A stretch of DNA of 64,000 nucleotides from Leucoraja erinacea (Eukaryota). Below are positions 1 through 64,000 of the stretch, in pieces (within the stretch, counting starts at the first letter, position 1; every line of letters starts with the position of its first letter). The position numbers and the translations under genes were made by a program. The notes beneath the pieces are model-generated. The model searched no databases. It was not told the DNA's origin and saw only the letters and a list, made by a program, of their open reading frames with translations. The DNA lies in contig NC_073386.1 in the NCBI RefSeq assembly GCF_028641065.1, positions 57,412,001-57,476,000 on the forward strand, read 5' to 3'.

Positions 1-2283
1 TCAACACCCTACCGCCAATACCATGTGCTCTAATTTTAGTCACCAGTCTCCCGTGCGGGACCTTATCAAAGGCTTTCTGAAAGTCTAGATACGCTACATC
101 CACTGGCTCCCCTTCATCCATTTTACTTGCCACATCCTCAAAATATTCCAGAAGATTAGTCAAGCATGATTTCCCTTTCATAAATCCACGTTGGACTAAT
201 CCTTTTACTGCTATCCAAATGGCCCATTATTACCTCTTTAATAATTGACTCCAGCATCATTCCCACCACCGAAGTCAGGCTAACTGGTCTGTAATTCCCC
301 GTTTTCTCTCTCGCTCCTTTCTTGAAAAGTGGGATAACATTAGCTATCCTCCAATCCACAGGAACTGATCCTGAATCTATTGAACATTGGAAAATGATCA
401 CCAATGCGTCCACTATTTCTAGAGCCACCTCCCTGAGGACCCTGGGATGCAGACCATCAGGCCCAGGGGATTTATCATCCTTCAGTCTCATTAGCCTACC
501 CAATACTATTTCTCGCCTAATGAAAATTTATTTCAGTTCCTCTACCCCCTTAGATCCTCTGTCCTCCAGTACATCTGGGAGATTGTTTGTGTCTTCCTTA
601 GTGAAGACAGATCCGAAGTACCTGTTCAACTCTTCTGCCATTTCCTTGTTGCCCATAATAATTTCACCCGTGTCTGCCTTCAAGGGACCCACATTTGACT
701 TTGCTATTATTTTTCCCTTAACATATCTAAAGAAGCTTTTACTGTCCTTCTTTATATTCCTGGCCAGCTTCCCTTCGTACTTCATCTTTTCAGCCCGTAT
801 TGCCCGTTTTGTTTCCTTCTGTTGTCCTATGAAAGTTTCCCAATCCTCTGGCTTCCGGCTACTCTTTGCTGTGTTATACATCTTTTCTTTTAGTTTTATT
901 CTATCCCTAACTTCTCTTGTCAGCCACGGTTGCCTCCTACTCCCCTTAGAATCTTTCTTCCTTTTTGGAATGAAATGATCCTGCGTCTTCCGGATTATGC
1001 CCAGAAATTCCTGCCATTGCTGTTCCACCGTCATTCCTGCTAGGATCCCTTTCCAGTCTACCTTGGCCAGCTCCCCTCTCATGCCTTCATAGTCCCCTTT
1101 GTTCAACTGCATCACTGACACTCCCGATTTAACCTTCTCCTTCTCAAATTGCAGATTAAAACTAATCATATTATGATCACTACCTCCAAGCGGTTCCTTT
1201 ACCTCGAGTTCTCTTATCATATCTGGTTCATTGGACGACATTAAATCCAGAATTGCCTTTTCTCTGGTCGGCTCCATTACAAGCTGCTCGAAGTATCCAT
1301 CTCGGAGGCATTCGACAAACTCTCTTTCTTGGGGTCCTGAACCAACCTGATTTTCCCAGTCTACCTGCATATTGAAATCCCCCATCACCACAGTGGCATT
1401 ACCTTTGTTACATGCCAGTTTTAACGCCTGCTGCAACTTACACCCTACATCCGGGCTACTGTTTAGGGGTCTATAGATACACCAATTAGTGTCTTCTTGC
1501 CTTTACAATTCCTCAACTCAATCCACAGTGACTCTACCTCGTCAGTCCCTATGTCTTCCCTTGCAAGGGACTGAATTCCGTCCCAACCAGCAGAGCTACC
1601 CCCCTCCTCTGCCCACCTGCCTGCCCTTTCTATAGGATGTATAACCCTGAATATTAAGTTCCCAGGCCCGATCCTCCTGCAGCCACGTCTCAGTAATCCC
1701 CACAATGTCATATCTACCAACCTCTAACTGAGCCTCAAGCTCATCTACTTTACTTCTTATACTTCACGCATTCATATACAATACTTTTAATTCCTTACGC
1801 ATCTCACCTTTCACATCGATCCCTATTACACTTGGCCATACTCTCCTATCCCTTTGTGAGCTTCCTTTCCCGTTAATTCTGGGGTCATTAACCATCCCTT
1901 TACTCTCTTTCCCTTTAACTCTGTCCTCGACTATCCCATTTGACACCCCACCCCCCTTATTCAGTTTAAAACCACCCGTGTAGCAGTGGCAAACCTGCCT
2001 GCCAGAATGCTGGTCCCCCACCTGTTAAGATGCAATCCGTCCCTTTTGTACAGTTCCCCCTTACTCCAAAACAGATCCCAGTGATCTAAGAATCTAAATC
2101 CCTGCCCCCTGCACCAGTTCCTCAGCCACACATTCAGGTCCCGTATCTCCCTGTTCCTGCTCTCGCCAGCACGAGGAACTGGAAGCAAACTGGAGATAAC
2201 AACCCTGGAGGTCCTGCTTTTCAGCATTTTTCCGAGCTCTCTAAAGTCACGCTGCAGAATATTCACCCCCTTCTTTCCGACAT
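1..2283 (-). mobile_element. CR1-clade (HER1-like) LINE, 5'-truncated within ORF1, frameshifted; ORF1 SGNH/GDSL esterase plus ORF2 APE endonuclease and start of RT
   Basis: ORFs with DGLHLN (esterase), YMNA/ITETW/GDFN/GSDH (APE endonuclease) and KSPGPDG..NYRPVSLTS (RT N-terminus). Confidence 0.93.
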
Positions 2284-3960: not shown

Positions 3961-4629
3961 CCTACCTTGTTGGGGGAAAAACACTTAAAAAGCAGCAGAA
4001 TATTTTTGACATTTACCAAATGAGAGTTGTCTACAGTCAAAGCATCTGTAGTACTTCTGCTTTATCAGTTTCACACTTAACTCTATAAACCTAAAGACTC
4101 CACTGTTGAAATGCAATTCAATATTTGACAAATCTGATCACCGTAACAGACAGATATAAAGCACACAGAGGGATTAATGTAGTGCATTTTTTCTTTGTGG
4201 TCCCTGAGAAATCAGTGGCAGTGGCAGAGGGTTGTTCTGATGTTCTAAGCCATGCCAATCCAGATATCCTTCCTTGGCACCAGTGGACCGTTACCACTCA
4301 CTGCCCGGTGTAACGTCATAAAGGCCCCCACTAGCCCAGGCACTTCCTGTGCATGCGCTGCCTAATGCATTGAGCATCTGGTGTGCAGGCATTTCAAAAT
4401 CCCCCAGAGCTCACAAAAATCTGCAATCAACTTTGAGCAAGTCTTATGTTTTAAAAGAAAAATGTAATGAGCAAAATGCTCCTGAGATTCAGAGCATGAA
4501 GTTCACACATATGTATTAGAAAATGGAAATTGACGCAAAATTCCACAGTTCCTCACCCCAAAATGTGGGAACGGCACCTCGTATTCCACTTGGGTAGCTT
4601 ACAACCCAACACCGTGTTCTCCAAAAACA

Positions 4630-17886: not shown

Positions 17887-18143
17887 AAAGTGTTGGAGTA
17901 ACTCAGCGGGTCAGGCAGCATCTGTGGAGAACATGGATAGGTGACATTTCACAGAGTGCTGGAGTAACTCAGCGGGTCAGGCAGCATCTGTGGAGAACAT
18001 GGATAGGTGACGTTTCACAGAGTGCTGGAGTAACTCAGCTGGTCAGGCAGCATCTGTGGAGAACATGGATAGGTGACGTTTCACTGCTGGAGTAACTCAG
18101 CTGGTCAGGCAGCATCTGTGGAGAACATGGATAGGTGATGTTT
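17887..18143. repeat. Tandem repeat, 66-bp unit x ~4, PLE-terminus derived
   Basis: Unit agagtgctggagtaactcagcgggtcaggcagcatctgtggagaacatggataggtgacgtttcac; units start at 17953 and 18019. Confidence 0.92.
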
Positions 18144-18239
18144 AGGAAGGAACAGCTGATGCTGCTCTAAACCAAAGATAGACACAAAAATCTGGAGCAA
18201 CTCAGCGGGTAAGGCAGCATCTCTAGAGAGAAGGAACAT

Positions 18240-18273
18240 GTGACGTTTCAGGTCGAGACCCTTCTTCAGACTG
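18240..18273 (-). ncRNA. Minimal hammerhead ribozyme motif (intact core)
   Basis: Minus strand cagt-CTGAAGA-A-GGGTC-TC-GACCT-GAAA-C-GTC-A. Confidence 0.6.
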
Positions 18274-18829: not shown

Positions 18830-19050
18830 ACAGGGAGAGAGAGGTTACCTAAAATTGGAAAATTCAATGTTCATTCTGTTGGGTTGTAAGCTAACTAAGA
18901 GGAATACGAGGTACTGCACCTCCAGTGTGTGTGTGTGTGTGTGTGGCCTCTCTCTGGCAATGTACGAGGCCCAGGACATAAAGGTCAGTGTGGGAATGGG
19001 AAGGGGAGTTGAAATGGCTAGTGACCGTGAGATCAAGTAGGCCTTGGCGG
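18830..19050 (-). mobile_element. Penelope-like element, ORF C-terminal fragment
   Basis: LEVQYLVFLLVSLQPNRMNIEFSNF, homologous to the PLE ORF end at 36100-36173. Confidence 0.75.
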
Positions 19051-28509: not shown

Positions 28510-28960
28510 AAATATGCCTGAGAGAAGTTGATACCTGGAACAGCGGATACAGTAGATGAGGTTGGAGGAAGTTCAAGTGAACCTCTGCCTCACCTGGAAA
28601 GACTGTTTTGGTCCGTGGATGGAATCGAGGGGGGAGGTAAAGGGACAGATGTAGCATTTTCTGCGGTTGCAGGGTAAAGTACCTGGGGAAGGGGTGGTTT
28701 GGGTGGGAAGGGACGAGTTGACCAGGGAGTTATGGAGGGAACGGCCTCTGCGTAAAGCAGAAAGGGGTGGAGATGGGAAGATGTGGCCAGTAGTGGGATC
28801 CCGTTGGAGGTGGGGAAAATGTCAGAGGATTATATGCTGCATGTGACGGCTGATGGGGTGGAAGGTGAGGACAAGGGGGACTCTGTCCTTGTTATGAATA
28901 GCGGAGGGGGAGTATGGGCGGAGCTGTGGGATATCGAGGAGACCCTAGTGAGAGCCTTAA
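28510..28960 (-). mobile_element. Penelope-like element fragment (region leading into the GIY-YIG domain)
   Basis: Reverse-complement homologue of 35594-35800 (CNRRKC..C...GPKQSFQV..FTCTSSNLIYCIRC). Confidence 0.8.
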
Positions 28961-29059: not shown

Positions 29060-32000
29060 GCTAGAGCATAGAAACAGGCCCTTCTCCAACCGAGCCCATA
29101 CTGACCAATGATCACCCGTACACTAGTGCTATCCCACACACTGGGGGAAACTGACGGAAGTCAATTAACCGACAAACCGGCACGTCTTTGAGGAAACCGG
29201 GGCACCTGGAGAAAACCCACGCGGTCACGGGGAGAACGTACAAACTCCATACAGACAGCGCTCGTAGTCAGGATCGAACCAGTGAGTGTGGCGCTGTGAG
29301 GCAGTAGCTCTACCGCTGCGCCACCGTGCCGCACTTAATCTCCAGCACCATGAGATATAGGGCTGCCCCTAACATAGCAGGATTTCTTCACATCGAGACC
29401 AGGATTCAGGAGACCACTCACTTCATGCTGACTTGAGTTCACATAAAGTGCAGATTTTACTCAGTCGAGTATTTCTTAGTTTAGTTTAGTTTAGAGATAC
29501 AGCACGGAAACAGGCCCTTCGGCCCACCGGGACCACGCCGACCAGCGATCCTCGCACATTAACACTATCCTACACCCACTAGGGACAATCTTTACATTTA
29601 CCAAACCAATTAACCTACAAACCTGTATGTCTTTGGAGTGTGGGAGGAAACCAAAGATCTCGGAGAAAACCCAGGTGGGTCACGGGGAGAACGTCCAATC
29701 TCCGTACAGACAGCGCCCATAGTCGGGATCGAACCTGGGACTCCGGCGCTGCATTCGCTGTAAGGCAGCAACTCTACCGCTGCCTTACTAACACTAACGT
29801 GCCTCAATTTCATCTCAGCATTTTATTATTTATTTCCAGTATCAGCAATGGTCTTGTGCTCACACTTATACTTATCAAAACTCTATAAAAATAGCGCATT
29901 AGTCATTGTACCACAAAATCAGAGGATCTGCACAAAAAACTCTGTCTGCAGATAAACCAAGATAGGTTGTTACTTTAGGGTTTTACATTTCCATTACAAA
30001 GTAATTTAGTTTAGTTTCGAGGTACAATATTGAAACAGGCCACTCGCCCCATAGAGTCTGTGCCGACCAGCGATCACACCGTCCACTAGCACTATCCCAT
30101 ACACAAGGGATGATTTACAATTTTTACTGATGCCAACTAACCTACAAACCTGCACGTCTTTGGAGTGTGGGAGGAAACCAGAGCTCCCGGAGAATTACCC
30201 ATGCGGTCAAACTCCGTACAGACAGCACCTGAGGTCTGGATGGAACCCGGGTCTCTGGTGCTGTGAGATAGCAATACTGCTGCACCACCACAAATTGATT
30301 AAAAGTGCTTGTGTTGTTTATCTTTCATGATATCATATTTACAACGATCTGCTGCAAATGGTGTACAATTGACAGTAGTATGCTGTTCGCAACATTAAAC
30401 AGTCTTCAAAGTTTACTGCAGCCAGCTTGTGTCTTCCCAACTACTTACCCCCTCCTCCTCCTTCCTCATGCCAATGTTCCTCCCACCAGGCCCCCTGCCC
30501 TCCCACTGAACTCTGCTACAGTCTTGTTCCCCACCTACTGTACATTCCCACCCAGATTTATCCCAATAGCTCCACTTGGAACAAGACACAGACTGAAAAA
30601 CATGTGCACGTCACAGTTTGAGCGCTCTCTCCAATAACAGAACACCCAAATTCAAGACTGAATTCGAAACCCAGGCTCCCCCCAGAGATAAGAATACACA
30701 AAAACGATTCTGCTCGGATCGCTAAGATTTATTTGGATAGACTAACAATTAAAGTGGAACAGTTTTTGATTACATTCATGTACAGAATCAGGCACCGACT
30801 AACCAGAAACTCAGTTCTATTTAGTCTGAAGAAGGGTTTCAACACCTATTTCCTTCACTCCATAGATGCTTCTGCACCCGCTGAGTTTCTCCAGCATTTT
30901 TGTCTACCTCAGTTCTATTTAGTTTAGAGATACAGCGTGGAAACAGGCCCTTCGGCCCACCCAGTCCGTGCCAGCTATTGATCACCTGCACACCAGTTCA
31001 ATCCTACTCAGTAGGGACGATTTACCGAAGCCAATTAACCTACAAACATGTGCATCTTTGGAGTGTGGGAGGAAACCGGAGCACCCAGAGAAAACCCACG
31101 CGGTCACTGAGAGAAGGTACAAACTACATACAGACAGCGCCTGTAGTCTGGATCGAACCCGGGTCTCTGGTGGTGTAAGGCAGCAACTCTGTGTCACCCT
31201 CTATTGGACAGGATAAAGACTACAATGCACAAATCTAAAGAGCAGCAAAATAATTTAGTTATGGGACAATACTGGGCGGCACAGTAGCTGGTGGAGCTGC
31301 TGCCTCGTGGTGCCAGAGACCTGGGTTTGTTACTGACCTCTGGTGCTGTCCGCGTGGAGTCTGCACGTCCACCCCGTGACCACGTGGTCCGGTGCCCCCC
31401 CCCACACCCCAGAGATGTGCGTCTGAAAGTTAAATAGTCTTTGAATAGCCCTTGGTGTGCAGGGAGCAGATGTAGGAATGGAGAACAAGACTAGTGTGAA
31501 GAGATGGTAGTATTGGACACTGGGCTGAAGGCAAGTTTCCATGCTGTATCTCAAAACCAGACAATACAATAAAAAGAAAATCCTAAATTTGCTCAGTGAT
31601 AAGCAGAAGTTACAAGACAAACCTTCAGCCTACAGTTCTGGTTTGTGTTCCTGGTTGATGGATTGGAATCAAGGCAATGCTGGCTTAGGCATTCCAAGCG
31701 CAATCTGTATTGGCACAGTCCTGCCTTAACCAAGCTAGGTTGCTCTTGCTCAAATCCACCTACACAAATGGGTTCAGAGAACAAGTGAGTGCCTTCAAAA
31801 ACAAAATTCCCCACTGTCTGTGTTGATCTTGGCGCAGTGTCTCAGTCTCGTCTGCATCAGAGGAAATGGAAAGGACAGAATGATGCAGTGGGCAGGTTTA
31901 GCCACTGCTTGAGAGCAGAGAAAAAATTAACAAAATGTTGCGAAAGGGAGCAACAGATACAGTTTGAATAAGCGTGACACGCCAACATGAACAGGGCGAC

Positions 32001-35080: not shown

Positions 35081-35897
35081 TAAATACTAAAAGTCTAGAA
35101 GTTATTGGATGGCAGATGTTTATGGCATAGGTTGACTATTGAATGGAAAACAGTGAGATTCAGTCTTGCCTCCTAATACCAGTTGTACCTTGACCGTCTA
35201 GTTTATTGTCACGTGTACTGAGGTACAGTGAAAAGCTTTTGTTGCGTGCTATCCAGTCAGCGGAAAGAAAATACATGATTACAAGCAAGCCACTTATAGT
35301 GTATAGATACATGATAAGGGAACAACATTTAGTGCAAGGTAAAGCCAGCAAAGTCTGATCAAAGATAGTCCGAGGGCCTCCAGTGAAGTAGATAGTAGTT
35401 CAGCACTGCTCTCTGGTTGTGGTAAGATGGTTCAGATACCTGATAACAGCTGGGAAAAAACTGTCCCTGAATCTGGAGGTGTGTGTTTCACACTTCTGTA
35501 CCTTTTGCCTGATGGGAGGGGGGAGAAGAGGGAGTGGCCAGGGTATGACTCATCTTGATTATGCGGCTGGCCTTGCCATGAGGTGTAAATGGAGTCCCTC
35601 CGCAACTCCCTTGTCAATTCTTCCCTTCCCTCCCGTACCACCCCCTCCCCGGGCACTTTCCGTTGCAACCGCAAGAAATGCAACACCTGTCCCTTCACCT
35701 CCCCCCTCGACTCCATTCAAGGTCCCAAGCAGTCGTTCCAGGTGCAACAAAGGTTCACCTGTATCTCCTCCAACCTCATCTACTGCATCCGCTGCTCTAG
35801 ATGTCAGCTGATTTACATCGGGGAGACCAAGCGGAGGTTGGGCGATTGTTTTGCCGAACACCTCCGCTCAGTCCGCAATAACCAACCTGAACTCCCG

Positions 35898-35991
35898 TCT
35901 GAAGAAGGGTTTCGGCCCGAAACGTTGCCTATTTCCTTCGCTCCATAGATGCTGCTGCACCCGCTGAGTTTCTCCAGCTTTTCTGTGTAAC
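35898..35991 (+). mobile_element. 94-bp hammerhead-containing mini-retroposon with 12-bp TSD
   Basis: cctgaactcccg at 35886-35897 and 35992-36003 flanks tCTGAAGAaGGGT-TTCG-GCCCGAAACGTTgcc... Confidence 0.8.
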
Positions 35992-36286
35992 CCTGAACTC
36001 CCGGTGGCTCAGCACTTCAACTCCCCCTCCCATTCCCAATCCGACCTCTCTGTCCTGGGTCTCCTCCATTGCCAGAGTGAGCAACACCGGAAATTGGAGG
36101 AACAGCACCTCATATTCCGCCTGGGCAGCTTGCATCCTGATGGCATGAATGTTGAATTCTCCCAATTTTGCTAGCCCTTGCTGTCTCCTCCCCTTCCTTA
36201 ACCCTCGAGCTGTCTCCTCCCATCCCCCCGCCCTCGGGCTCCTCCTCCTCCCCTTTTTTCTTCCTTCTCCCCTCCCACCCCCCATC

Positions 36287-36320
36287 AGTCTGAAGAAGGG
36301 TTTCGGCGTGAAACGTCACC
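36287..36320 (+). ncRNA. Hammerhead motif at the native PLE 3' terminus (stem II mutated)
   Basis: agtCTGAAGAagggtttcggcgtGAAACGTCacc. Confidence 0.55.
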
Positions 36321-37674
36321 TATCTTCTTCGCTCCATAGATGCTGCAGCACCCGCTGAGTTTCTCCAGCAATTTTGTGTACCTTCAATGGAAGGGGGTTT
36401 TGTTTGTGTGAAGGTCTGGGCTGTGTCCACAATTCTCTGCAACTTTTTGTGGTCCTGGATGGAGCTGTTCCCAAACCGAGCTGTGATGCGGGCTGATCAG
36501 GGAAAGTTTCTTCTCAGCTGCTATCATGCAACTGAACCATCCTCTCACTGACCAGACTGTGGTTTTATCTACCATCTACCTGATTGGAGACCCTTTGACT
36601 ATCTTTAATCGGTCTTTATCCTGCACTAAACATTATTCCGGTTAACCTGTATCAGTACACTCTGGACAGCGTGATTGTAATCATATATATTAACTGGATA
36701 ACATGCAACAAAAACGCTTTTCACTGTACTTTAGTAACGTTCGTACACGTGACAATAATAAACTAAACTAAAGCAAATTCATTAACGAACGTAAACTGAA
36801 AACTCAAGATAGGACCACCTTAGTAAGAGAAAGCTTCCATAAAGAGGGTTATGACATCTCAGCTGTATATAGTGCAAGTAGCTCATCTCATTTCTTTGCA
36901 TATTTGGAACAAGAGATGATATTTGTAATCAAAAGATTCACACAGGTTGCACTCTACACATCAATTGATTAAAAAGATGCAGCAATGAACCAGGCCATGT
37001 GGCCCATGATGACCATCGATCACCCGTTTACACTCGTACTACAGTGTTTCATTGTCATGTGCCCAGAAACAGAACAATGAAATTCTTACTTCTATGTTCT
37101 GACACTCTCTCATCCACTCCCTACACACTAGGGGCAAGTTTACAGAGACCGATTAATCTACAAACCTGCACATCTTTGGGCTGTGGGAGGAAACCCGAGA
37201 AAACCCACGCGGTCACGGGGAGAATGGACAAACTCCGTACAGACAGCACCAGAGGTCAGGATTGAAACCGGGTCTCTGACGCTGTGAGGCAGCAACTCTA
37301 CTGCTGCACCACCGTGCCACCTTGCGATGTAAAGAATAGCCGTTCTGCATTCAATGTCACCAACCCATGAATGAAGGACATCAGGAAGAAAACATATCCA
37401 TGACAAGCCCAATGTTCAGTCAAACCTTGGTCTGGTCAGCTTGCGGCTTTAACAGTGCCTTGTGATTTAGTGGGACATGCAGTTGGCAACTCGCTGACTG
37501 TACTCCTGCTGATCCAAACGTCAACTTGTCCCGGGGAAAAATTACAAGACTATGATTGCTTTTATGCTTGAGATGGCAGCCTGATCACAAGGGTTGAGAA
37601 AGTAATATCTCCAGACCAACAGCTGACCATCTATTCCAAAACATTATGGCCAGAGGGATGAAAATCTGGCAGCT

Positions 37675-38370
37675 AGACACAAAAAGCTGGAGTAACTCAG
37701 CGGGACAGCCAGCATCTCTGGAGGGAAGGAATGGGTGATGTTTCGACTCGAGATTCTTCTTCAGACGGAGAGTCAGGGGAGAGGGAGGCTAGAGATATGG
37801 AAGGGTAAGGTGTGAAAACGACAGATCAAAGCAGACGATAAGGAAATGTAGAACCACATATCTACATGTGGAACCACGGGGTATATACAATGGTTCATTG
37901 TTGGCTGAGAGGAAGGTGATGAGGCACAGTGAAATCAATCAGAGGGCCGGTGAAACTAGTCAGAGAATTAGGGTGGGGGAGGGGCGGAGAGAGAGAGAGG
38001 GATAGCAAGGGTTACTTGCATTGAATGGAATTAAATACTTTAGAAGTTAGAGAAATTAATATTCATATCGCTGGGTTGTAAGCTTCCCAAGCTAAATATG
38101 AGGTTCTGTTCCTACAATTTGGTTTGGGCCTCACCAAAACGTCACCCATTCCTTCTCTCCAGAGATGCTGCCTATCTCGCTGGGTCTGGCAGCATCACTG
38201 GACAAAAAGGACGAGGGAATTTTTTGATTGGGACCTGTCTTCAGATGGAAAATAAGGGGTGGGATCCTACTTTCAGTCTGAAGAAGGGCCACGACCCAAA
38301 ACGTCACCGTTGAGTTACTCCAGCACTCTGAGTCTTTTTTGTAAATCAGCATCTGCAGTTCCTTGTTTGG
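37675..38370 (-). mobile_element. PLE 3' fragment with inverted terminal units
   Basis: Reverse ORF end (KL.EQNLIFSLGSLQPSDMNINF), 3' UTR and hammerhead remnants on both strands (37733-, 38278+). Confidence 0.75.
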
Positions 38371-44680: not shown

Positions 44681-45689
44681 TCCTGATTAATTCACAAATT
44701 GAGTTGTTCTTAGATGGGTAAATATTACTTCCTAAACCCGAACCTTTACATATATTCTCTCCCCTAGCCACAAGCATCAAAAGATGATAAAAGCAAGAAC
44801 ACTTCACACACTCAAAATGTTTTTATAAGAACCACAAAGGGTGGAATCAAGTGCAGAACAAAAAGTCCCATTTACAAAACATTTGGTCAGATTAAAAATA
44901 ATTATTTTCTGCCTCCCCCCGAAGTGTCGGAAAATTGACTTGGGGAGAGAACGTCCAATCCATTTCTCTCAAGTCTACCTCCGATAGACACAGAAGAAAT
45001 CAAGTCTCCACATTAATCAAAGCTCAGTTAGCTCAGTCTGAAGAAAGGTCTAGACCAAAAACATCACCCATTCCTTCTCTCCAGAGATGCTGCCTGTCCT
45101 GCTGACTTACTCCAGCATTTTGTGTCTATCTTCGGTTTAAACCAGCATCTGTAGTTCCTTTCAACACAAGACGAATTGCAGAGAGAGGGGAGCTGCAAGG
45201 GTTACTTGAAATTAGAGAAATCAATGTTCATACCGCTGGGGTTGTAAGCTGCCCAAACTAAATATGAGGTGCTGTTCCTCCAATTTGCGCTGGGTCCCAC
45301 TCTGACAATGGAGGAGGCCCAGGACAGAAAGTTCAGTGTGGGAATGAGAGGGGGAGTTAGTGTTTAGCAACTGGGTGATCAGGTCGGCCCAGGCAGACGG
45401 AGCATCATGATACCATGGAATTTGTGGAATCCCCAATCATTGACCAAAGATGGGAATCCTATTAAAGAGTAAAGTAAACAGCAATATGCACGGGAAAAAG
45501 GAACAACGTGGTGGTGTAACTCAGCACGTCACGCAGCATCTCTGGAGAAAAATGTCATAAGCCAGCATCTGCAGTTCCTCGTTGATGGTACCATTTCCCC
45601 CTCAAGAGGAAAATGTCACAAAGACCTAGGGAAAATCTTTGGAAGGTGAAAGGAAGGAGAAGGGAAATGTTTAAAGGGAGAGTTCAATA

Positions 45690-49307: not shown

Positions 49308-52300
49308 CTCCCCCACCTGCCCTTCACTTCTGGAGTAATAGAATCAAGCTTGTAACTTTTGGAAACATCTTCCTTTAGTTTAGTTTCTACAAGTGGGGTT
49401 TAATTCAATGCAGATTTAATTTTTCTCCTGTGAAGCATTATCTTGTCCATCACTCGGGTTTCATCAACATTTTTCATTTCTTGAACTGTCAACAGTTTCA
49501 TGTTAACAGCAAATTTGGAGCTTGTGTGCATTGGCAATGTAACTTTCATATAAGCAAGACACCAGCCAGACCATGAAGGAACAGAGTGCTGGAGTAACTC
49601 AGCGGGGACTCATCAGGACCCTTCTTCAGGACCAGACATCAACGAGTGCTGGACTCACCATGACGTAGAAACATAGAAAATAGGTACAGGAGTAGGCCAT
49701 TCAGCCCTTCGAGCCAGCACCGCCTTTCAATATGATCATGGCTGATCATCCAAAATCAATACCCCGTTCCTGCTATCTCCCCATATCCCTTGATTCTGTT
49801 AGCCCTAAGAGCCACATCCAACTCTCTCTTGAAAACATCCAGTGAATTGGCCTCCACTGTCTTCTGTGGCAGAGAATTCCACAGATTTTCCGTGTGAAAA
49901 AGTTATCCCTCATCTCAGTCCTAAATGGCCTAACCCTTATTCTTAAACTGTGACCACTGGTTCTGGACTCCCCCAACATCGGGAACACTGTTCCTGCATC
50001 TAGCCTTCACTCCTTTAAGAATGTTATATGTTTCTATAAGATCCCCAATATCTTATCCTTCTCAATTCCAGCCCAGTCGACCCATTCTTTCATGATATGT
50101 CAGTCCCGCCATCCCGGGAATTAACCTGGTTAACCTACGCTGCACTCCCCCAATAGCAAGAATGTCCTTCCTCAAATTAGTAAAGGTACAGCAGTGTGAA
50201 AAAGCACACCTCCAGATTCAGGGACAGTTTCTTTCCAGCAGTTATCAGGCAACTGAATCATCCTACCACAACCAGATGGCAGTGCTGAACTACTATCTAC
50301 CTCATTGGTGACCCTCGGACTATCCTTGATCGGACTTTGCTGGCTTTATCTTGCACTAAACGTTATTCCCTTACCAAGTATCTATACACTGTAAATGGCT
50401 CGATTGTAATCATGCATTGTCTTTCTGCTGACTGTTTTTAGCACGTGACAAAAAGCATTTCTCTGTACACGTGACAATAAACTCAACTGAACTGAGTTCC
50501 TTGTATCTAACACTTGAGTCCAGTTGGTTATAACCACTGTGACCTGTGGTCATTTGGTGAAGTGGTTTATTCCCTTCTGGGCCTGCCTTCCATTCGTAAG
50601 ATCGCAAGTTTGTAAACCATCATAATCAGAGGTGACCTCATAATGTGTCTGGCCGGCGACCTCACAGTGAACTGCATCCGTAACCATGAGAGACGGGCTC
50701 CATTCCATCTGTCAACTTGGTAAACTGGCTCCATTTCATCTGTCAACTTGAAGTGGGTGGGTGCACCATACCCATTCTGCCAGGCATTGAAACAGCTGGT
50801 AGCTACTAGAGGTCGAAACTCTAACCTTCACGGTGTGGATCAATAGTCCAAGCAAGGAGTTTCGAGAATGCCGGTGAAAAAGGACAGCGCCACGCAGACT
50901 TACAAGAGGAGATTTAAGGTAGATCTGAATCTGTTAATAGACCAAGATAAAAGGTGGAGTGACTCAGCGGGTCTTATTCTTAAACTGTGACCCCTAGTTC
51001 TGGACTCCCCCTACATTGGGAACATAGGGACGTAGGGCTCTTCTGCCACCTCTGAGTGTATCTTTATGGGGGAGAATCCAATCCATCCAGTGACAATCCT
51101 GTCTCCAGTCTCCAACATTCGCCCACCTCTCCCCTCCCCCCGCCCATACCCAGCCTTTTCCTGTCACTGGACCTTTTTATATCCACTGTTGGTGCAACAA
51201 CTGTCTTGGCTTCTCTACTCCACTGGCCCACTCAAACCGGGAGGGTCCTGACCTGAAACGACAAATGTTACGGAGCATCTCTGGAGAACATGGATAGGTG
51301 ACGTTTCACAGTGTGTTAAAGTAACTCAACGGGTCAGGCAGCATCTCTGGAGAACATGGATAGATGACGTTTCACAGAGTGCTGGAGTAACTCAGCGGGT
51401 CAAACGATGTCGGAAAGAAGGGGTTGAATATTCTGCAGTGTGGCTTTAGAGAGCTCGGAAAAATGCTGAAAAGCAGGACCTCCAGTGTTGTTATCTCTGG
51501 TTTGCTTCCAGTTCCTCATGCTGTCGAGAGCAGGAACAGGGAGATACGGGACCTGAATGTGTGGCTGAGGAACTGGTGCAAGGGGCAGGGATTTAGATTC
51601 TTAGATCACTGGGATCTGTTTTGGAGTAAGGGAGAACTATACAAAAGGGATGGATTGCATCTTAACAGATGGGGGACCAGCTTTCTGGCAGGCAGGTTTG
51701 CCACTGCTACATGGGTGGTTTTAATCTGAATAAGGGGGGTGGGGTGTCATATAGGACGGTGTTAAAGGGAAAGAGAATAAAGGGATGGTTAATGACCCTA
51801 GAATTAACGGGAAAGGAAGCTCACAAAGGGATAGTAGCGTATGGCCAAGTGTAATAGGGATCGATGTGAAAGGTGAGATGCGTAAAGAATTAAAAGTATT
51901 GTATATGAATGCGCAAAGTATAAGAAGTAAAGTAGATGAGCTTGAGGCTCAGTTACAGGTTGGTAGATATGACATTGTGGAGATTACTGAGACGTGGCTG
52001 CAGCAAGATCGGGCCTGGGAACTTAATATTCAGGGTTATACATCCTATAGAAAGGACAGGCAGGTGGGCAGAGGAGGGGGGTAGCTCTGCTGGCGAGGGA
52101 TGGAATTCAGTCCCTTGCAAGGGAAGACATAGGGACTGACGAGGTAGATTCACTGTGGATTGAGTTGAGGAATTGTAAAGGCAAGAAGACACTAATTGGT
52201 GTTATGTACAGACCCCCAAATAGAAGTCCGGATGTAGAGTGTAAGTTGCAGCTGGAGTTAAAACTGGCATGTAACAAAGGTTACTGTGGTGATGGGGGAT

Positions 52301-53317
52301 TTCAATATGCAGGTAGACTGGGAAAATCTGCTTGGTTCAGGACCCCAAGAAAGAGAGTTTGTAGAATGTCTCCGAGATGGATTCTTAGAGCAGCTTGTAA
52401 TGGAGCCGACCAGAGAAAAGGCAATTCTGGATTTAGTGTTGTCCAATGAACCAGATATGATAAGAAAACCTGAGGTAAAGGAACCGCTTGGAGGTAGTGA
52501 TCATAATATGATTAGTTTTAATCTGCAATTTTAGAAGGAGAACGTTAAATCGGAAGTGGCAGTGATGCAGTTGAACAAAGGTGGCCTATGAAGGCATGAG
52601 AGGGGAGCTGAGCTAGACTGGAAATGGATCCTAGCAGGAATGACGGTGGAACAACAATGGCAAGAAAAACAGACAGACTTTTGTCCGAGGCTGCCAACAT
52701 GCGGCGCCCCTAGTGGCCAATGAGTTGTTCCTTCTCCATTTGGCTCTTCAAGTCCTCTCCGTCATTCAATCATATCTGGATTGGCATGGCTTAGAACATC
52801 AGAACAACCCTCTGCCACTGCCACTGATTTCTCAGGGACAACAAAGGGAAAATGCACTCCAGTAATCCCTCTGTGTGCTTTATATCTGTCTGTTACGATG
52901 TTCAGATTTGTCAAATATTGAATTGCATTCCAACAGTGGAGTCTTTAGGTTTATAGAGTTAAGTGTGAAACTGATAAAGCAGAAGTATTTTTGTGCCAGG
53001 AACAAACTACACACACTTTGACTATAGACAACTCTCATTTGGTAAATGTCAAAAATATTCTGCTGCTTTTTAAGTATTTTTCCCCAACAAGGTAGTGTGG
53101 CTCAGCAGTAGAGTTGCTGCCTCACAGCACCGGAGACCCATGTGCTGTCTGTACAGAGTTTGTACGTTCTCCCCGTGACCAGCATGGTTTTCTGCTTTGG
53201 TTTCCTCCCACACTCCAAAGACATATAGGTTTGGAGGTTAATTGGTTTTGGTAAAAAGTCCCCAGTGTGTAGGATAGTGCGGGTGTGCAGGTGAATACTG
53301 GTTGGCGTGGACATCGG
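49308..53317 (-). repeat. Inverted segmental duplicate of about 1010-4267 (permuted order)
   Basis: 49308-50188 = rc 2635-3561; 50722-50963 = rc 2286-2537; 51407-52666 = rc 1008-2283; 52774-53317 = rc 3720-4267. Includes sequence not otherwise repeated in the window. Confidence 0.9.
51407..52666 (+). mobile_element. CR1 ORF1 esterase plus endonuclease fragment (duplicate of 1008-2283)
   Basis: Near-identical ORFs and the same 5' truncation point. Confidence 0.9.
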
Positions 53318-54201
53318 TGGTGGGGAAGATGCTGGAGCCAATTATAAAAGATGAAATTGCGGCACGTTTGGATAGCAGTAACGGGATCCCACATAGGAGA
53401 TTAGTGCACAAAATTAGGGCACATGGTATTGGGGGTAGAGTGCTGACATGGATAGAAAATTGGTTGGCAGACTGGAAACAAAGAGTAGGGATTAACGGGT
53501 CCCTTTCAGAATGGCAGGCAGTGACTAGTGGGGTACCGCAAGGCTCGGTGCTGGAACCGCAGCTATTTACAATATACATCAATGATTTGGATGAAAGGAT
53601 TCAAAGTAACATTAGCAAATTTGCAGATGACACAAAGCTGGGTGGCAGTGTGAACTGTGAGGATGATGCTATGAGAATGCAGGGTGACTTGGACAGGTTG
53701 GGGGAGTGGGCAGATGAACGGCAGATGAAGATTAATGTGGATAAATGTGAGGTTATCCACTTTGGTATCAAAAACAGGAAGGCAGATTACTATCTGAATG
53801 GCGTCAAGTTGGGAAAAGGAGATGTACAATGGGATCTGGGGGGGTCCTTGTTCATCAGTCTATGAAAGTAAGCATGCAGGTACAGCAGGCAGTGAAGAAA
53901 GCGAATGGCATGTTGGCATTTATAAGAAGAGGAGTCGAGCAAAGAGACCCTTCTGCAGTTGTACAGGGCCCTCGTGAGACCACACCTGGAGTATTGTGTG
54001 CAGTTTCGGTCCCCCAATTTGGGGAAGGACATTCTTGCTATTGGGGGAATGCAGCGTAGGTTTACAAGGTTAATTCTCGGGATGGCGAGTGTCCTATGCT
54101 GAGTGAATGGAGCGGCTGGGCTTGTACACTCTGCAGTTTAGAAGAATGAGAGGGGATCTTATTGAAACATATAGATTGTTAAGGGTTTGGACACGCTAGA
54201 G
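53315..54201 (+). mobile_element. CR1 RT fragment whose 3' continuation lies at 49037-49305
   Basis: GVPQGSVL..FTIYINDL..KFADDTKL; ends at acacgctagag, and caggaaacatg resumes at 49037. Confidence 0.88.
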
Positions 54202-57594: not shown

Positions 57595-57955
57595 GGTTTT
57601 AAACTTGGGAAGTTTACACCCCAGCGGTGTGGATATTGACTTCTCCAACTTCAAGTAACCCTTGCTTTCCCTCTCTCTCCATCCCTCCCCCACCCTAGTT
57701 CTCCAACCAGTCTGACTGCCCCCCTGATTACATTGCATGCCTCGTTGTCACCTTCCCCGAGCTAACAATGATCCATTCTACATGTTCCTTCAACTTCATC
57801 CCCTTTGATGTCTCGGTTTCACACCAAACCCTTCCATATCTCTGTGTCTCCCTCTCCCTTGACTCTCAGACTGAGGAAGGGTCTCGACCCAAAACGTCAC
57901 CCATTCCTTCTATCCAGAGATGCTGCCAGTCCCGCTGAGTTACTCCACCATTTTA
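57595..57955 (+). mobile_element. PLE 3' end with hammerhead motif (57871: CTGAGGA..AAAACGTC)
   Basis: LGSLHPSGVDIDFSNFK* followed by the 3' UTR and terminal unit. Confidence 0.8.
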
Positions 57956-58579: not shown

Positions 58580-61500
58580 ATTTAGTTTTTAGTTTTAGAG
58601 ATACAGCACAGAAACAGGCCCTTCGGCCCACTAGGTCCGCGCTGACCAGCGATCTCCGCACATTAACACTATACTACACACACTAGGGACAATTTTTACA
58701 TTTACCAAGCCGATTAACCTACAAACCTGCACGTCTTTGGAGTGTGGGTGGAAACCGAAGATCTCGGAGAAAACCCACACAGGTCACGGGGAGAACGTAC
58801 AAACTCCATACAGACAGCACCCATAGTCGTGATCGAACCCGGGTCTCCAGCGCTGCATTCACTGTAAGGCTGCAACTCTACCGCTGCGCCACCGTGACCT
58901 TCTCTGGCGAGAAGGAAAGCATGATGTCTCGGGTCGGGACTCTTGAAGACTAACGTCCTTCCTCAAAACAGTCAGCTACCAATCTCGTGAAACATGGTCT
59001 GGAAATGCCAAATTTCAATATTTCAATACAGAGAGGCAAAGTTAAAAACTGGCAAAACATCAATTCAAATATTCCCGATCACAGGAAAAACAAGGGCGGC
59101 ACGGCGGCTCAGCGGTAGAGTTGTTGCCATACAGCGCCAGAGACTCAGGTTCCATCCTGTCTGTACAGAGTTTGTACCTTCTCCCTTGTGACGGTGTGGG
59201 TTTTCTCCGGGTGCTCCGGTTTCCTCCCACACTCCACAGACTCACAGGTTTGTAGGCTAATTGGCTTCTGTAAATTGTCCCCTGCGCGTAGGATGGAACG
59301 CTTGTGAGGGCAATTCAGCATGGACTCAGTGGGCCGAAATGCCTGTTTCTACACTGCATCTCGAAACAAAAGTAAAAATGCAGTTCAAATTGAAAGTGGT
59401 TGCTCTCAAAAAAGGCAGGCAGATGTGGAGAAGGGGGAAATTTGAGCTTATTCATAGACAAACACTTTAGATGCACGTTACCCCTTGGAACCCTATGGTG
59501 TGCAGTCAATATTCATACAAGGTCCCCACCAGGTCATTACCCTGGCCCTTAGTGGGCACGGTGGCGCAATGGTAGAGTTGCTGCCTCACAGCGGCAGAGC
59601 CCCGGGTTCCATCCCGACTACGGGTGCTGTCTGTACGGAGTTTGCACGTTCTCCCTGTGACCATGTGGGTTTTCTCAGAGATCTTCGGTTCGTCCCACAC
59701 TCCAAGGACATATGGGTTTATATAAAGTGAATTGGCTTGGTGTAAATGTAAATGGTCCCTAGTGTGTGTAGGGTAGTGTTAGTGGCAGGGATCACTGGTC
59801 AGTGCGGACTCGGTGGGCCGAAGGGCCTGTTTCCGCGCTATATCTCTAAATGAAAACTAAGTTCAAAACCCGACCTCCGACCCTGATGAACAGTGTCAAA
59901 CCAAAACATTACCCATTCCTTCTCTCCAGAGATGCTGCCTGACCTGCTGAGTTACTCCAGCATTTTGTGCCTGTCTTCAACAATTCAAACTTGGATAGAT
60001 ATTAACTAAACAAGTTAGCTTCCTTTGCTAAGCCTTGCAAGTTAGAGGCATCATCTGCTATAGAATGTAGCACAATGTAGCATAGAAATAGACCCTTCGC
60101 TCCACAATGTTCATGCCATATATAATACCGAACTCCCTTATTTGCCTGCACGTGATCTATATCCCTCCGATCCCTATATCCATGTGCCTATCTAAAAGCC
60201 TCTTAAACACCACTATCATATATGCCTCCACCACCACCCTTGACATTCTAAGCACCCACCACTCCAAAACAAAAATTGGCCCATATATCTCCTTTAAACT
60301 AGGCCCCTCTCACTTAAATTTTGTCTACCCTAACATTTTCACCCGGGGGAAAAAGGAGCTATTCAGCAACGATTCAGGTTGTTTAGGCTCTAGAGATACA
60401 GCGCAGAAACAGGCCCTTCACCCACCGAGTCTGTGCCGACCAGCGATCCCTGCATACTAGCACTATCCTATACGCTAGGGACAATATAACCAAAGCCAAT
60501 TAACCTACAAACTTGCAAACCTACAATTAACCTACAAACCTGTACGTCTTTGGAGTGTGGGAAGAAACGAGAGCACCCAGAGAAAACCCACGCAATCACG
60601 GGGAGAACTCTTTACAGACAGCACCCGTAGTCAGGATCAAACCCGTGTCTCTGGTGCTGTAAGGCAGCAACTCTACCGCTGCGCCACCGTGTGACCTGCA
60701 GAAACTGAACGGAAAATAAAGTGCAGGAAAAAACTGCAGATGCTGGTTTAAACCGAAGATAGACAGAAAATGCTGGAGTAACTCAGCAGACAGCATCTCT
60801 GGTGAGAAAGAATGGGTGACTTTTCAGGTCAAGACCCTTCTTCAGACTTAAATAAAGTGCTGAATTAACTGTATCCCAACACAAAACGTCACCCATCTAC
60901 TGTATGTACTTCAGAGATGCTGCCTAACCCCCTGTGTTACTCCAGCACTCTGTGCTTGATGACAGATTCCATCATCTTCAGTTCCTCGTATATGAATGGA
61001 AAATAACACGAGCTGTAAACTTTTCCAAATTAATACTTTGGCGGGGGTGGGGGGGGGGATGAAAAGAACCTTTCGAGTTGATAACAGGAAAAATAAAATG
61101 TCACAGATGGAGTTAATGATCTGAGCAAATGCCTTTCTTCCATTAGTCTTGTGGGACTAATTTGCCTCGAATGATTAATCAGATAATCCTATCAGGCAAA
61201 ACATTCTCGGCACACAGCACAGATTAGCTTACCCATGTAACAAATATCTAAAGGGCAGCTCTCTGCAAATAATTCTGACGGCAATGTTGATGAAATAACA
61301 AAAGTGACATCCGTTTACTGCTAGTCTGCAGATCATAACTGCTGCAGAGATTGTGGATATGGAAGGTGCTTTCAAGGCAGCTTTGAGTCAGAGTCATACA
61401 GTGTGGAAACAGGCCCTTCAGCCCAACTAGTTCACACCAACCACACTAGTCCCACCTGCCCGCGTTTGGCCCATATCCTCCAAACCTATCCTATCCATGT

Positions 61501-63082: not shown

Positions 63083-64000
63083 ACAAGGAATTGCAAATGC
63101 TGATTTCCAAAAGATAAAAAGCTGGAGTAAAGGAAGGAAGGAAGAGAAGAATTATTCAACCTGTCAAAAATAAACAAAAACAGGATTCTACTCCTCAACT
63201 CCCGATAAGTGGTGGACGAAGGAACGGCGGATGCTGGTTTAACCCAAAATTCTGGAGTAACTTAGTGGGACAGGCAACATCTCTGGATAGAAGGAATGGG
63301 TGACGTTTCTGGTCAGAAGAGGGGTCTCGACGAAACGTCACCCATTCCTTCTCTCTAGAGATGCTGCCTGTCCCGCTGAGTTCCTCCAGCATTAGTGGTT
63401 AGTGGGTAACGCACAAAGGGTGCGGAGAGAGTAAGCTGAGGGTCTCTGGGGAATGGCTGTCACAATGGTATAATGAGCGTTTGTTAGATGGAAAGGTGGC
63501 AACAATGCAGGGCTGAGTGGGCAGCAATACTTCCCAAGTCAAAGACAAGTAGCGGAGTGCAGTGACTAAGCCATGAATCACCTGCCACTGACTCGACTCT
63601 TTGTGCCAAATGAGTGCAGTGATAACTTGAATCAGTCTTCAGAAAGGTGGGTGCCCCCTGTCCCACCCTGCCCTCTGCCCCCTCCAATAGATTAACTGAT
63701 GTAGAAAACATTACAAGACTTGCTATACTTCCATCGCTCATTCTTTAATCTTCCCCCACAGTGAATACTAATGTTTACAACTTACACACACACACACACA
63801 CAATCCTAGCCCTCTCCTTCTCTACAGAGATGCTGCCTGTCCTACTGAATTACTCCAGCATTTTGTGTCCATCTCCTAATCTGCAGATCTGAATCACTGG
63901 TGCCCTCTGCTGGCCACACAATGTATTTCCAAAGAGAGACACAAAGTGCTGGGTGGATGTGTTTGCTGGAGAGTCCAGCGGGGTGGGGACAACACTATGG

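What the first reader, a model, noticed from the sequence alone, without database searches (positions are those of the whole stretch)
35886..36003. A 94-bp element consisting of little more than a hammerhead ribozyme, inserted with a perfect 12-bp target-site duplication
Seen: cctgaactcccg flanks 35898-35991 on both sides. Removing the insert and one TSD copy restores the PLE GIY-YIG frame (NQPELPVAQHFN). The insert begins at T-CTGAAGA-A, followed by stem II GGGT-[TTCG]-GCCC (G.U pair, UUCG loop), GAAA-C-GTT, and the PLE 3' tail. Established: Penelope-like elements carry minimal type-I hammerheads with a very short palindromic stem III, and non-coding ribozyme retroelements (retrozymes) exist. 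Inference: either a discrete ribozyme-defined micro-retroposon mobilised by PLE RT/GIY-YIG, or an extreme 5'-truncated PLE whose end is set by ribozyme structure.
Basis: partly seen in the sequence, partly recalled or inferred. Interest (0 to 1): 0.8.

Follow-up and report, generated by a model that had tools for sequence, protein, structure and literature searches.

The report
Solo Penelope tail copy with hammerhead motif
A young 94-base copy of just the tail end of a Penelope-like jumping gene, carrying that family's known minimal hammerhead-ribozyme motif, has landed inside an older broken copy of the same kind of element; this is an ordinary product of the family, but its start point recurs in other copies and is not the ribozyme's cutting site.

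Summary
CCTGAACTCCCG occurs at 35886-35897 and 35992-36003 and flanks a 94-bp insert (35898-35991). The insert splits the GIY-YIG reading frame of a 5'-truncated Penelope-like element (PLE). Uninterrupted paralogues that skip exactly 106 bp are present in contigs of four public runs.

The insert is the terminal module of a PLE. It has a 29-nt minimal hammerhead (HHR) motif and a 65-nt tail that ends at the family's short 3' end. It is 89% identical to the host's own tail (36289-36380).

The module makes up 6.2% of the window (49 copies). 25 copies start within 5 nt of the same position, just before CUGAAGA. These include all three solo copies with exact TSDs (12, 15 and 11 bp) and several head-to-head pairs.

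The predicted scissile bond lies 29 nt inside the element, so self-cleavage cannot set this 5' end. Only 1 of 24 truncated copies starts at that bond. I infer a discrete RNA 5' end, probably a transcription start at TCAGTCT, copied by run-off from the PLE's internal RT start site.

Rfam gives no hammerhead hit. The motif does fit the published PLE min-HHR descriptor.

Solo min-HHR PLE remnants are already described in the literature. First readers noted the same family on at least eight other pieces of this genome. Verdict: new member of a known kind, low to moderate interest.

The parts
35589..35897 (+). Host PLE fragment, upstream ORF piece. It holds the CX4CX2C linker (CNRKKCNTC) and the first half of the GIY-YIG domain (LIYIGETKRRLGDCFAEHLRSVRNNQPELP). 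The host is 5'-truncated near 35585.
   Evidence: ORF list and translation. Pfam GIY-YIG E=0.014, below the curated cut-off. Homologues at 46-72% identity, one of them (P0037) above the Pfam cut-off.
35886..35897 (.). Target-site duplication, left copy: CCTGAACTCCCG
35898..35991 (+). The 94-bp insert: a solo copy of the PLE terminal module (min-HHR motif plus short tail). All five CpGs are intact, so it is young.
   Evidence: 89% identical to the host's own tail and 75-83% to other copies. Paralogues lacking it are seen.
35899..35926 (+). Minimal hammerhead motif. CUGAAGA box 35899-35905; extra A 35906; stem II GGGU/GCCC with UUCG loop 35907-35918; GAAA 35919-35922; palindrome ACGU 35922-35925; U17 at 35926. 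The predicted scissile bond is 35926|35927.
   Evidence: Direct reading. Passes the descriptor scan, 4 intact motifs in the window against 0.29 in shuffles. No Rfam hit.
35945..35991 (+). Tail. AGAUGCUG...CAGCUU hairpin region followed by UUCUGUGUAAC, ending at the short-form 3' end, the presumed internal RT start site.
   Evidence: 3' ends of copies cluster at about 92-97 and about 123-132. Folds. The two-start-site 'tail' model comes from PMC11167929.
35992..36003 (.). Target-site duplication, right copy: CCTGAACTCCCG
36004..36174 (+). Host PLE fragment, downstream ORF piece (VAQHFNSP...NVEFSQFC, then stop)
36175..36288 (+). Host PLE 3' UTR. It is pyrimidine-rich and ends ...CCCCCCATCAG just before the module.
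   Evidence: About 30 nt of shared upstream homology with copy 5238(-).
36289..36383 (+). The host's own terminal module. Its hammerhead motif is decayed: stem II 3' strand is GGCGU instead of GGCCC.
30825..30907 (+). Second solo copy of the same subfamily (83 bp, with a 10-bp internal deletion), flanked by a 15-bp TSD, CTCAGTTCTATTTAG
60735..60848 (-). Third solo copy. It is the long-tail form, starts AAG+TCTGAAGA, and is flanked by an 11-bp TSD, GCACTTTATTT.

Best explanation
The 94-bp insert is a dead-on-arrival retrocopy of only the terminal module of a Neptune-type Penelope-like element (PLE).

**Shown**
- It was inserted with a 12-bp target duplication into an older PLE fragment.
- Its 3' end is the family's short 3' end.
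- Its 5' end, 0-4 nt before the CUGAAGA box, recurs in other copies.

**Inferred**
1. PLE reverse transcriptase started at its internal start site on a PLE-derived RNA. Two such sites are known for PLEs, and they explain the short and long 3' ends seen here.
2. It ran off at a discrete RNA 5' end lying at (T)(C)AG|UCUGAAGA.
3. That end is most simply the transcription start of the terminal-repeat promoter. TCAGTCT fits the initiator consensus YYANWYY, and solo copies mostly begin AG-TCTG.
4. Initiation at the start site nearest the 5' end of the transcript would then give exactly this 94-nt (short form) or roughly 115-130-nt (long form) product.

The hammerhead motif is carried whole as a passenger or cis element. 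Its own cleavage site is internal and does not make the end.
For: - **Insertion.** TSD and restored frame. Uninterrupted paralogues skip exactly 106 nt in four runs. Homologues read through the site.
- **PLE identity.** The host's own tail is 89% identical. 3' ends are bimodal at about 92-97 and about 123-132, matching the optional 30-40-bp PLE tail and the two RT start sites (PMC11167929, PMC8557442). Head-to-head pairs with tails pointing outward occur at 18270/18273, 6743/6767, 4718/4718, 63316/63313 and 38245/38277, as described for PLEs (PMC8557442).
- **Recurrent 5' end.** 25 of 49 module copies start at module positions 1-5. All 3 TSD-bounded solo copies are among them. Pairwise homology stops 0-5 nt upstream for most pairs.
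- **Bases just upstream.** G at -1 and A at -2 are kept in most copies with unrelated flanks, while -3 and -4 vary.
- **Promoter precedent.** D. virilis Penelope has an internal TATA-less promoter with an initiator in its terminal repeat (PMC2377424).
- **Cleavage not required.** In vitro, PLE cDNA runs to the RNA 5' end and hammerhead cleavage is not needed (PMC11167929).
Against: - No RNA ends could be read. All public runs were served as contigs.
- No full-length element is in the window, so the position of the module at a PLE 5' end was not seen.
- YYANWYY is a loose consensus.
- This insert itself has CG, not AG, before TCTG, and those bases belong to the TSD.
- Six of the nine 'other flank' copies have no detectable TSD. 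Their upstream sequence could belong to PLE 3' UTR families not otherwise present in the window.
- The sample is one 64-kb window.
Confidence: 0.55

Rival explanations
1. Ordinary random 5' truncation. PLE insertions are heavily 5'-truncated, and this copy is simply an extreme case. The apparent pile-up would then reflect only the edge of a conserved module shared by diverged PLE families.
For: - High 5' truncation is a defining PLE trait (PMC8557442; bioRxiv 10.64898/2026.07.22.740005).
- 24 of 49 copies are truncated at scattered positions.
- 8 of the 25 'full' starts continue upstream into pyrimidine-rich PLE 3' UTR.
- Only 3 solo copies have proven ends.
Against: - All 3 TSD-bounded solo copies start within 3 nt of one position in a 94-130-nt module.
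- Head-to-head pairs meet at the same position: CTTCAG-T-CTGAAG at 18270, and also 6743 and 38245.
- In contigs of other runs, inverted joints land at 35897 (table 5c).
Confidence: 0.2
2. Ribozyme-defined micro-retroposon, retrozyme-like. The unit is excised from a longer or multimeric RNA by hammerhead self-cleavage, possibly circularised, and then copied by PLE RT.
For: - The motif fits the published PLE min-HHR descriptor, and the insert is one of only two copies in the window with every core element intact.
- Non-LTR retrozymes related to PLE terminal repeats exist (PMC7229834; bioRxiv 10.64898/2026.07.22.740005).
- Stem II pairing is register-specific: 82% of cells paired against 8-46% when slid.
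Against: - Cleavage would fall between 35926 and 35927, inside the element. A self-cleaved unit would begin at module position 30 or be circularly permuted, whereas the insert is colinear with the PLE 3' end.
- Only 1 of 24 truncated copies starts at that bond, where about 0.8 is expected by chance.
- There is no tandem dimer of the full unit. The 66-bp arrays lack the CUGANGA box and stem II.
- Helix I is at most 2 bp.
- No Rfam hit.
- The active fold costs 4-8 kcal/mol over the MFE fold.
- For an Anolis PLE, no reads ended at the hammerhead site and cleavage was dispensable (PMC11167929).
Confidence: 0.1
3. A template boundary set by structure or bound protein. The telomerase-related PLE RT, bound to the hammerhead region, stops or switches template once it has copied the motif. 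This would be analogous to a telomerase template-boundary element.
For: - PLE RTs are the closest relatives of telomerase RT (PMC8557442).
- The Anolis PLE hammerhead cleaves only when the protein is present, which implies that the protein binds nearby (PMC11167929).
Against: - A roadblock would be met on the 3' side of the structure, before the motif is copied, not at its 5' edge.
- PLE-linked copies read straight through into the 3' UTR.
- In vitro products shorten with 5' truncation of the RNA, which is run-off behaviour (PMC11167929).
Confidence: 0.08

Closest known systems
Solo minimal hammerhead motifs of Penelope-like elements (Cervera & De la Pena 2014, PMC4209133)
   Same: CUGANGA and GAAA boxes; an extra nucleotide between A9 and G10.1; a G10.1-C11.1 pair; palindromic 15.2-16.2 (ACGU) with no real helix III; location in the PLE terminal repeat. 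Thousands of dispersed single motifs are attributed to truncated PLEs, and pairs on opposite strands are reported.
   Different: Helix I here is only about 2 bp. The published metazoan consensus has 4-5 bp, though D. virilis also has 2. That paper does not describe a recurrent 5' end of the solo copies at the edge of the motif.
PLE 'tail' and internal initiation of reverse transcription (Frangieh et al. 2024, PMC11167929)
   Same: Two 3' ends about 30-35 nt apart lie downstream of the hammerhead motif. cDNA runs off at the RNA 5' end. Inverted pairs are consistent with priming on both DNA strands. Hammerhead cleavage is not needed for insertion.
   Different: That work used an Anolis Poseidon element in vitro, whose ORF starts inside the hammerhead. 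Here the distances differ: 65 nt and about 85-100 nt from the scissile bond to the 3' ends, against 85-92 nt in Anolis. No biochemistry exists for this family.
Animal non-LTR retrozymes (PMC7229834; bioRxiv 10.64898/2026.07.22.740005)
   Same: Short non-coding hammerhead-bearing repeats related to PLE terminal repeats, with dispersed monomers, proposed to be mobilised by PLE proteins.
   Different: Retrozymes are tandem repeats with a complete, usually canonical, type I hammerhead in each unit, and are expressed as circular RNAs. This insert is a single colinear copy of a PLE 3' end. The tandem arrays in the window lack half the motif.
HDV-like ribozymes at the 5' ends of R2, RTE and L1Tc retrotransposons (background knowledge; mentioned in PMC4209133)
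   Same: A ribozyme motif sits at the very 5' end of a retrotransposon copy.
   Different: HDV-like ribozymes cleave at their own 5' edge and so create that end. A hammerhead cleaves near its 3' side, so it cannot. No HDV-like, hatchet, pistol or twister hit was found at E<=10.

Membership tests
Penelope-like element (host and source of the insert) | C-terminal GIY-YIG endonuclease | tested here: met
   YIGET...R.L..R..EH is read directly. Pfam GIY-YIG gives E=0.014, below the cut-off, for the interrupted piece. Homologue P0037 is above the cut-off, and P0001 and P0010 are just below it.
Penelope-like element (host and source of the insert) | Telomerase-like reverse transcriptase in the same ORF | tested here: inconclusive
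   The host is 5'-truncated near 35585 and has no RT part. The window holds no full-length PLE.
Penelope-like element (host and source of the insert) | CX2-5CxxC linker before EN (Neptune/Nematis clades) | tested here: met
   C-NRKK-C-NT-C is read in the translation of 35589-35897. The same motif is in P0001, P0007, P0010 and P0003. The feature is defined in PMC8557442.
Penelope-like element (host and source of the insert) | Optional 30-40-bp tail, heavy 5' truncation, adjacent inverted 5'-truncated copies, TSDs | tested here: met
   3' ends at about 92-97 and about 123-132. 24 of 49 copies are truncated and 8 sit in head-to-head pairs. TSDs of 11, 12 and 15 bp.
Hammerhead ribozyme, PLE minimal type I | Core boxes CUGANGA and GAAA, stem II closed by G10.1-C11.1, H17 | tested here: met
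   Direct reading of 35899-35926. Descriptor scan gave 4 intact motifs against 0.29 expected.
Hammerhead ribozyme, PLE minimal type I | Extra nucleotide between A9 and G10.1, and palindromic 15.2-16.2 | tested here: met
   A at 35906 and ACGU at 35922-25925+10000 (35922-35925). Both features are listed as family hallmarks in PMC4209133.
Hammerhead ribozyme, PLE minimal type I | Helix I of 4-5 bp or more | tested here: not met
   Only U-A/G and G-C can pair: 2 bp, 81% of cells. The upstream PLE 3' UTR is pyrimidine-rich, as is the 3' strand.
Hammerhead ribozyme, PLE minimal type I | Match to curated covariance models (Rfam Hammerhead families) | tested here: not met
   No hit at gathering score on the whole window, nor at E<=10 on 35700-36500.
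Hammerhead ribozyme, PLE minimal type I | Covariation supporting stem II | tested here: inconclusive
   82% of cells are paired against 8-46% in slid registers, but only 2 single-cell double changes; 12 of 500 shuffles reach the observed pairing. The copies are mostly decaying pseudocopies.
Hammerhead ribozyme, PLE minimal type I | Self-cleavage | not testable with these tools
   The predicted active fold costs 4.2-8.4 kcal/mol over the MFE fold in the four intact copies. Published min-HHRs cleave weakly, as dimers or with protein (PMC4209133, PMC11167929).
Non-LTR retrozyme | Tandem repeats with a complete hammerhead in every unit | tested here: not met
   The insert is single. The 66-bp arrays at 17889-18143 and 51274-51402 start at GAAAC and lack the CUGANGA box and stem II.
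Non-LTR retrozyme | Unit-length linear and circular RNA | not testable with these tools
   All runs were served as contigs, so no RNA ends or circles can be read.
tRNA-derived SINE | tRNA-like 5' part with an internal Pol III promoter | tested here: not met
   ARAGORN finds no tRNA-like gene in the window.

The most novel reading that the evidence does not exclude
The hammerhead-plus-tail module may be a self-contained natural minimal template for the PLE machinery. On this reading it is an RNA of about 94 nt (short form) or roughly 115-130 nt (long form), with a defined 5' end at the edge of the ribozyme motif and the RT entry site at its 3' end. It would be sufficient in vivo for target-primed reverse transcription and would amplify as 'mini-Penelopes' with dynamics of their own.
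Probability: 0.25. Interest if true: 0.5.

Novelty: new member of a known kind. Interest (0 to 1): 0.3.

Why it matters
Dispersed single min-HHR motifs in animal genomes have been attributed to truncated PLEs since 2014, and this case fits that picture. The small addition is that, in this cartilaginous-fish family, the shortest copies are not randomly truncated. They start at one position next to the motif and end at the known RT start sites.

If that holds genome-wide, it points to a discrete 94-130-nt RNA as a natural minimal substrate of a PLE reverse transcriptase. That would help define the cis requirements of PLE mobilisation. It would also show that the hammerhead is copied intact rather than used to cut the template. 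It does not change what is known about hammerheads or PLEs in kind.

Tried and rejected
- **Rfam.** Scans at gathering score (whole window) and at E<=10 (35700-36500) found no hammerhead or other ribozyme. Only chance snoRNA and lncRNA matches appeared.
- **MFE folding.** Monomers show no hammerhead fold and z-scores are insignificant. A competing helix, GAAGAAGG with the CCUUC tract, has no register specificity or compensatory change, so it is not proposed as functional.
- **Splice-acceptor idea.** A pyrimidine tract plus CAG sits just before the motif, as with the D. virilis intron. I rejected this as the maker of the end because solo copies retain the AG.
- **ATG inside the module as the PLE ORF start.** Rejected, because the long-tail form has a stop 18 codons later.
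- **66-bp tandem arrays as cleavage-to-RT-start units.** Rejected. The unit junction is at GAAAC, 7-8 nt before the scissile bond.
- **Mismatch-tolerant TSD search.** No TSDs were found for six further solo-looking copies.
- **Search for a full-length PLE.** Two metagenome pattern scans were empty.
- **RNA evidence.** All runs were contigs, so starts, ends and strand cannot be read. The depth ratios were not used as evidence of expression.
- **Joined ORF.** The joined (insert-removed) ORF was not built or searched; its two pieces were searched apart.

Full report
**1. Observation**

The window reads ...aaccaa CCTGAACTCCCG [94 nt] CCTGAACTCCCG gtggct.... The repeats are at 35886-35897 and 35992-36003, and the insert is 35898-35991. 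A 12-nt exact match abutting the element start never arose in 300 shuffles of the flank.

The ORF 35589-35897 ends ...AEHLRSVRNNQPELP, and the ORF from 36004 begins VAQHFNSPSH.... Removing the insert plus one repeat (106 nt) therefore joins the two pieces in frame. I did not build or search the joined protein; its pieces were searched apart.

Relatives found with the upstream piece (P0001, P0007, P0010; 46-51% identity) read ...P-V-[AS]-[KR]-HF... across this point. P0010 aligns to the window in two blocks that break at 35912 and 35995.

Contigs from four public runs (three other coded organisms, plus one possible RNA run) include forms that skip exactly 106 nt, with 12 letters fitting either side. 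Their loose ends at 35897 continue as GTGGCTCAGCAC at 0.98-0.99 agreement. Because the host is itself a high-copy repeat, these are uninterrupted paralogues rather than an orthologous empty site. They still show that the 94 nt are an insertion and that the 12 nt are duplicated target.

**2. What the host and the insert are**

- The host (about 35589-36383) is a 5'-truncated PLE. It has a CX4CX2C linker, a GIY-YIG domain, a stop at 36172-36174, a 114-nt pyrimidine-rich 3' UTR, and a terminal module at 36289-36383.
- The GIY-YIG call is weak in Pfam for the interrupted piece (E=0.014). One homologue is above the cut-off and the motif is clear by eye.
- The insert is 89% identical to the host's own module.
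- A module-only profile finds 49 copies covering 6.2% of the window. Six further GIY-YIG remnants are present.
- 3' ends fall into two classes, about 92-97 and about 123-132 nt from the module start. This matches the optional 30-40-bp PLE 'tail' (PMC8557442), which was shown for an Anolis PLE to be the stretch between two internal RT start sites (PMC11167929).
- Head-to-head pairs with tails pointing outward are frequent. This is another described PLE trait, and it is consistent with priming on both DNA strands (PMC11167929).
- First readers of this scan noted the same dispersed family on at least eight other pieces of this genome. Those notes are unchecked.

**3. The hammerhead motif**

- Positions 35899-35926 read CUGAAGA-A-GGGU[UUCG]GCCC-GAAA-CGU-U.
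- This meets every feature that Cervera & De la Pena list for metazoan PLE min-HHRs: the two core boxes, an extra base between A9 and G10.1, a G10.1-C11.1 pair, and a palindromic ACGU in place of helix III (PMC4209133).
- A descriptor scan finds four intact motifs in the window against 0.29 in shuffles. Only this insert and the copy at 18269(-) also keep GAAACGU-H.
- Most copies have lost G12 through CpG decay (CCCGAAACG to CCCAAAACA). The insert keeps all its CpGs, so it is young.

Evidence against calling it a canonical hammerhead:
- Helix I is at most 2 bp.
- Rfam's hammerhead models give nothing, even at E<=10.
- MFE folds pair GAAGAAGG with the downstream CCUUC tract. The hammerhead-competent fold costs 4.2-8.4 kcal/mol more.

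Across 22 copies, stem II is register-specific: 82% of cells are paired against 8-46% when slid. Compensatory changes are almost absent, as expected for decaying copies. The competing helix has no register specificity.

I file the motif as a PLE-type min-HHR by descriptor. Its activity is untested and is likely weak or protein-dependent, as published for such motifs (PMC4209133, PMC11167929).

**4. The 5' end**

Of the 49 copies, 25 begin at module positions 1-5:
- 8 continue upstream into pyrimidine-rich PLE 3' UTR, so they are longer PLE fragments.
- 8 sit in head-to-head pairs. In several of these an arm starts at the same base, for example CTTCAG-T-CTGAAG at 18270.
- 9 have unrelated flanks. 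Three of those have exact TSDs, and all three start within 3 nt of the same position: 35898 (12 bp, 94 bp long), 30825 (15 bp, 83 bp long) and 60846(-) (11 bp, long-tail form, starting AAG+TCTGAAGA).

Pairwise homology between most copies stops 0-5 nt upstream of TCTGAAGA. In copies with unrelated flanks, G(-1) and A(-2) are mostly kept, while -3 and -4 vary.

The other 24 copies are truncated at scattered positions. Only one (63810+) begins at the predicted scissile bond (module 29|30), where about 0.8 is expected by chance.

Hammerhead cleavage cannot make this end, because it would cut 29 nt inside the element.

**5. Mechanism**

Shown: PLE-type insertion with a TSD, 3' ends at the two tail positions, and a recurrent 5' end.

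Inferred:
1. The template RNA has a discrete 5' end at (C)AG|UCUGAAGA.
2. RT starting at the internal site runs off there, as in vitro PLE products do (PMC11167929).
3. The simplest source of such an end is a transcription start in the terminal repeat. PLE-linked copies read YCAGTCT, which fits the initiator consensus YYANWYY with A(+1) two bases before the U. D. virilis Penelope has an internal TATA-less, initiator-type promoter in its repeat (PMC2377424).
4. RT initiation at the start site nearest the 5' end of a PLE transcript would then give exactly these 94-nt or roughly 115-130-nt products.

I put about 0.95 on 'PLE-mediated retrocopy of the terminal module', about 0.6 on 'discrete RNA 5' end', and about 0.4 on 'that end is a transcription start'.

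The rivals are random truncation, a retrozyme-like ribozyme-processed unit, and a structure or protein boundary. They are weighed in their own sections.

**6. Comparison and novelty**

Dispersed single min-HHRs from truncated PLEs, opposite-strand pairs, tails, and PLE-derived non-autonomous hammerhead repeats are all published (PMC4209133, PMC8557442, PMC7229834, bioRxiv 10.64898/2026.07.22.740005). This insert is a clean, young example.

The only addition is the recurrent 5' end beside the motif, together with the point that this end is not the cleavage site. Verdict: new member of a known kind; interest 0.3.

**7. Limits**

- No RNA ends could be read, because all runs were contigs.
- All counts come from one 64-kb window.

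Noticed in passing
17889-18143 and 51274-51402: Tandem arrays with a 66-bp period. The unit runs from GAAACGTCACC (module position about 21-22) to ...CCAGCACTCTGTG (about 88). It therefore carries the 3' half of the hammerhead core but lacks the CUGANGA box and stem II. Both arrays have the same unit junction, which suggests a family of its own.
   Followed up: partly
module positions about 48-130, e.g. 18155-18225(-), 45085-45165(+), 60735-60800(-): AGAUGCUG can pair either with CAGCAU (short form) or with CAGCAUCU in the 30-35-nt long-tail extension. Each pairing is followed by 10-12 nt up to the short or the long 3' end. This is a candidate RNA basis for the two PLE RT start sites.
   Followed up: partly
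63810-63880 (+): A 5'-truncated module copy begins at the predicted hammerhead scissile bond, directly after a (CA)n run. It is the only such copy in the window, which is consistent with chance.
   Followed up: partly
28522-28911(-), 45239-45358(-), 18851-19025(-), 38043-38132(-), 57596-57652(+), 4554-4610(+): Six further remnants of PLE GIY-YIG coding sequence. Most have a module copy downstream, so the window is dense with 3' fragments of PLEs.
   Followed up: partly
528-1436(-) and 53302-53865(+): LINE-type ORFs: an AP-endonuclease family domain (Exo_endo_phos_2) and RVT_1.
   Followed up: no
45.8-48.9 kb and 54.2-54.8 kb: Long G/A-rich low-complexity blocks with many overlapping tandem-repeat calls.
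   Followed up: no
35896-35945 and equivalent parts of other intact copies: In every intact copy the MFE fold sequesters the CUGAAGA box by pairing GAAGAAGG with the pyrimidine tract about 10 nt past the scissile bond. The pairing is not register-specific across copies.
   Followed up: yes
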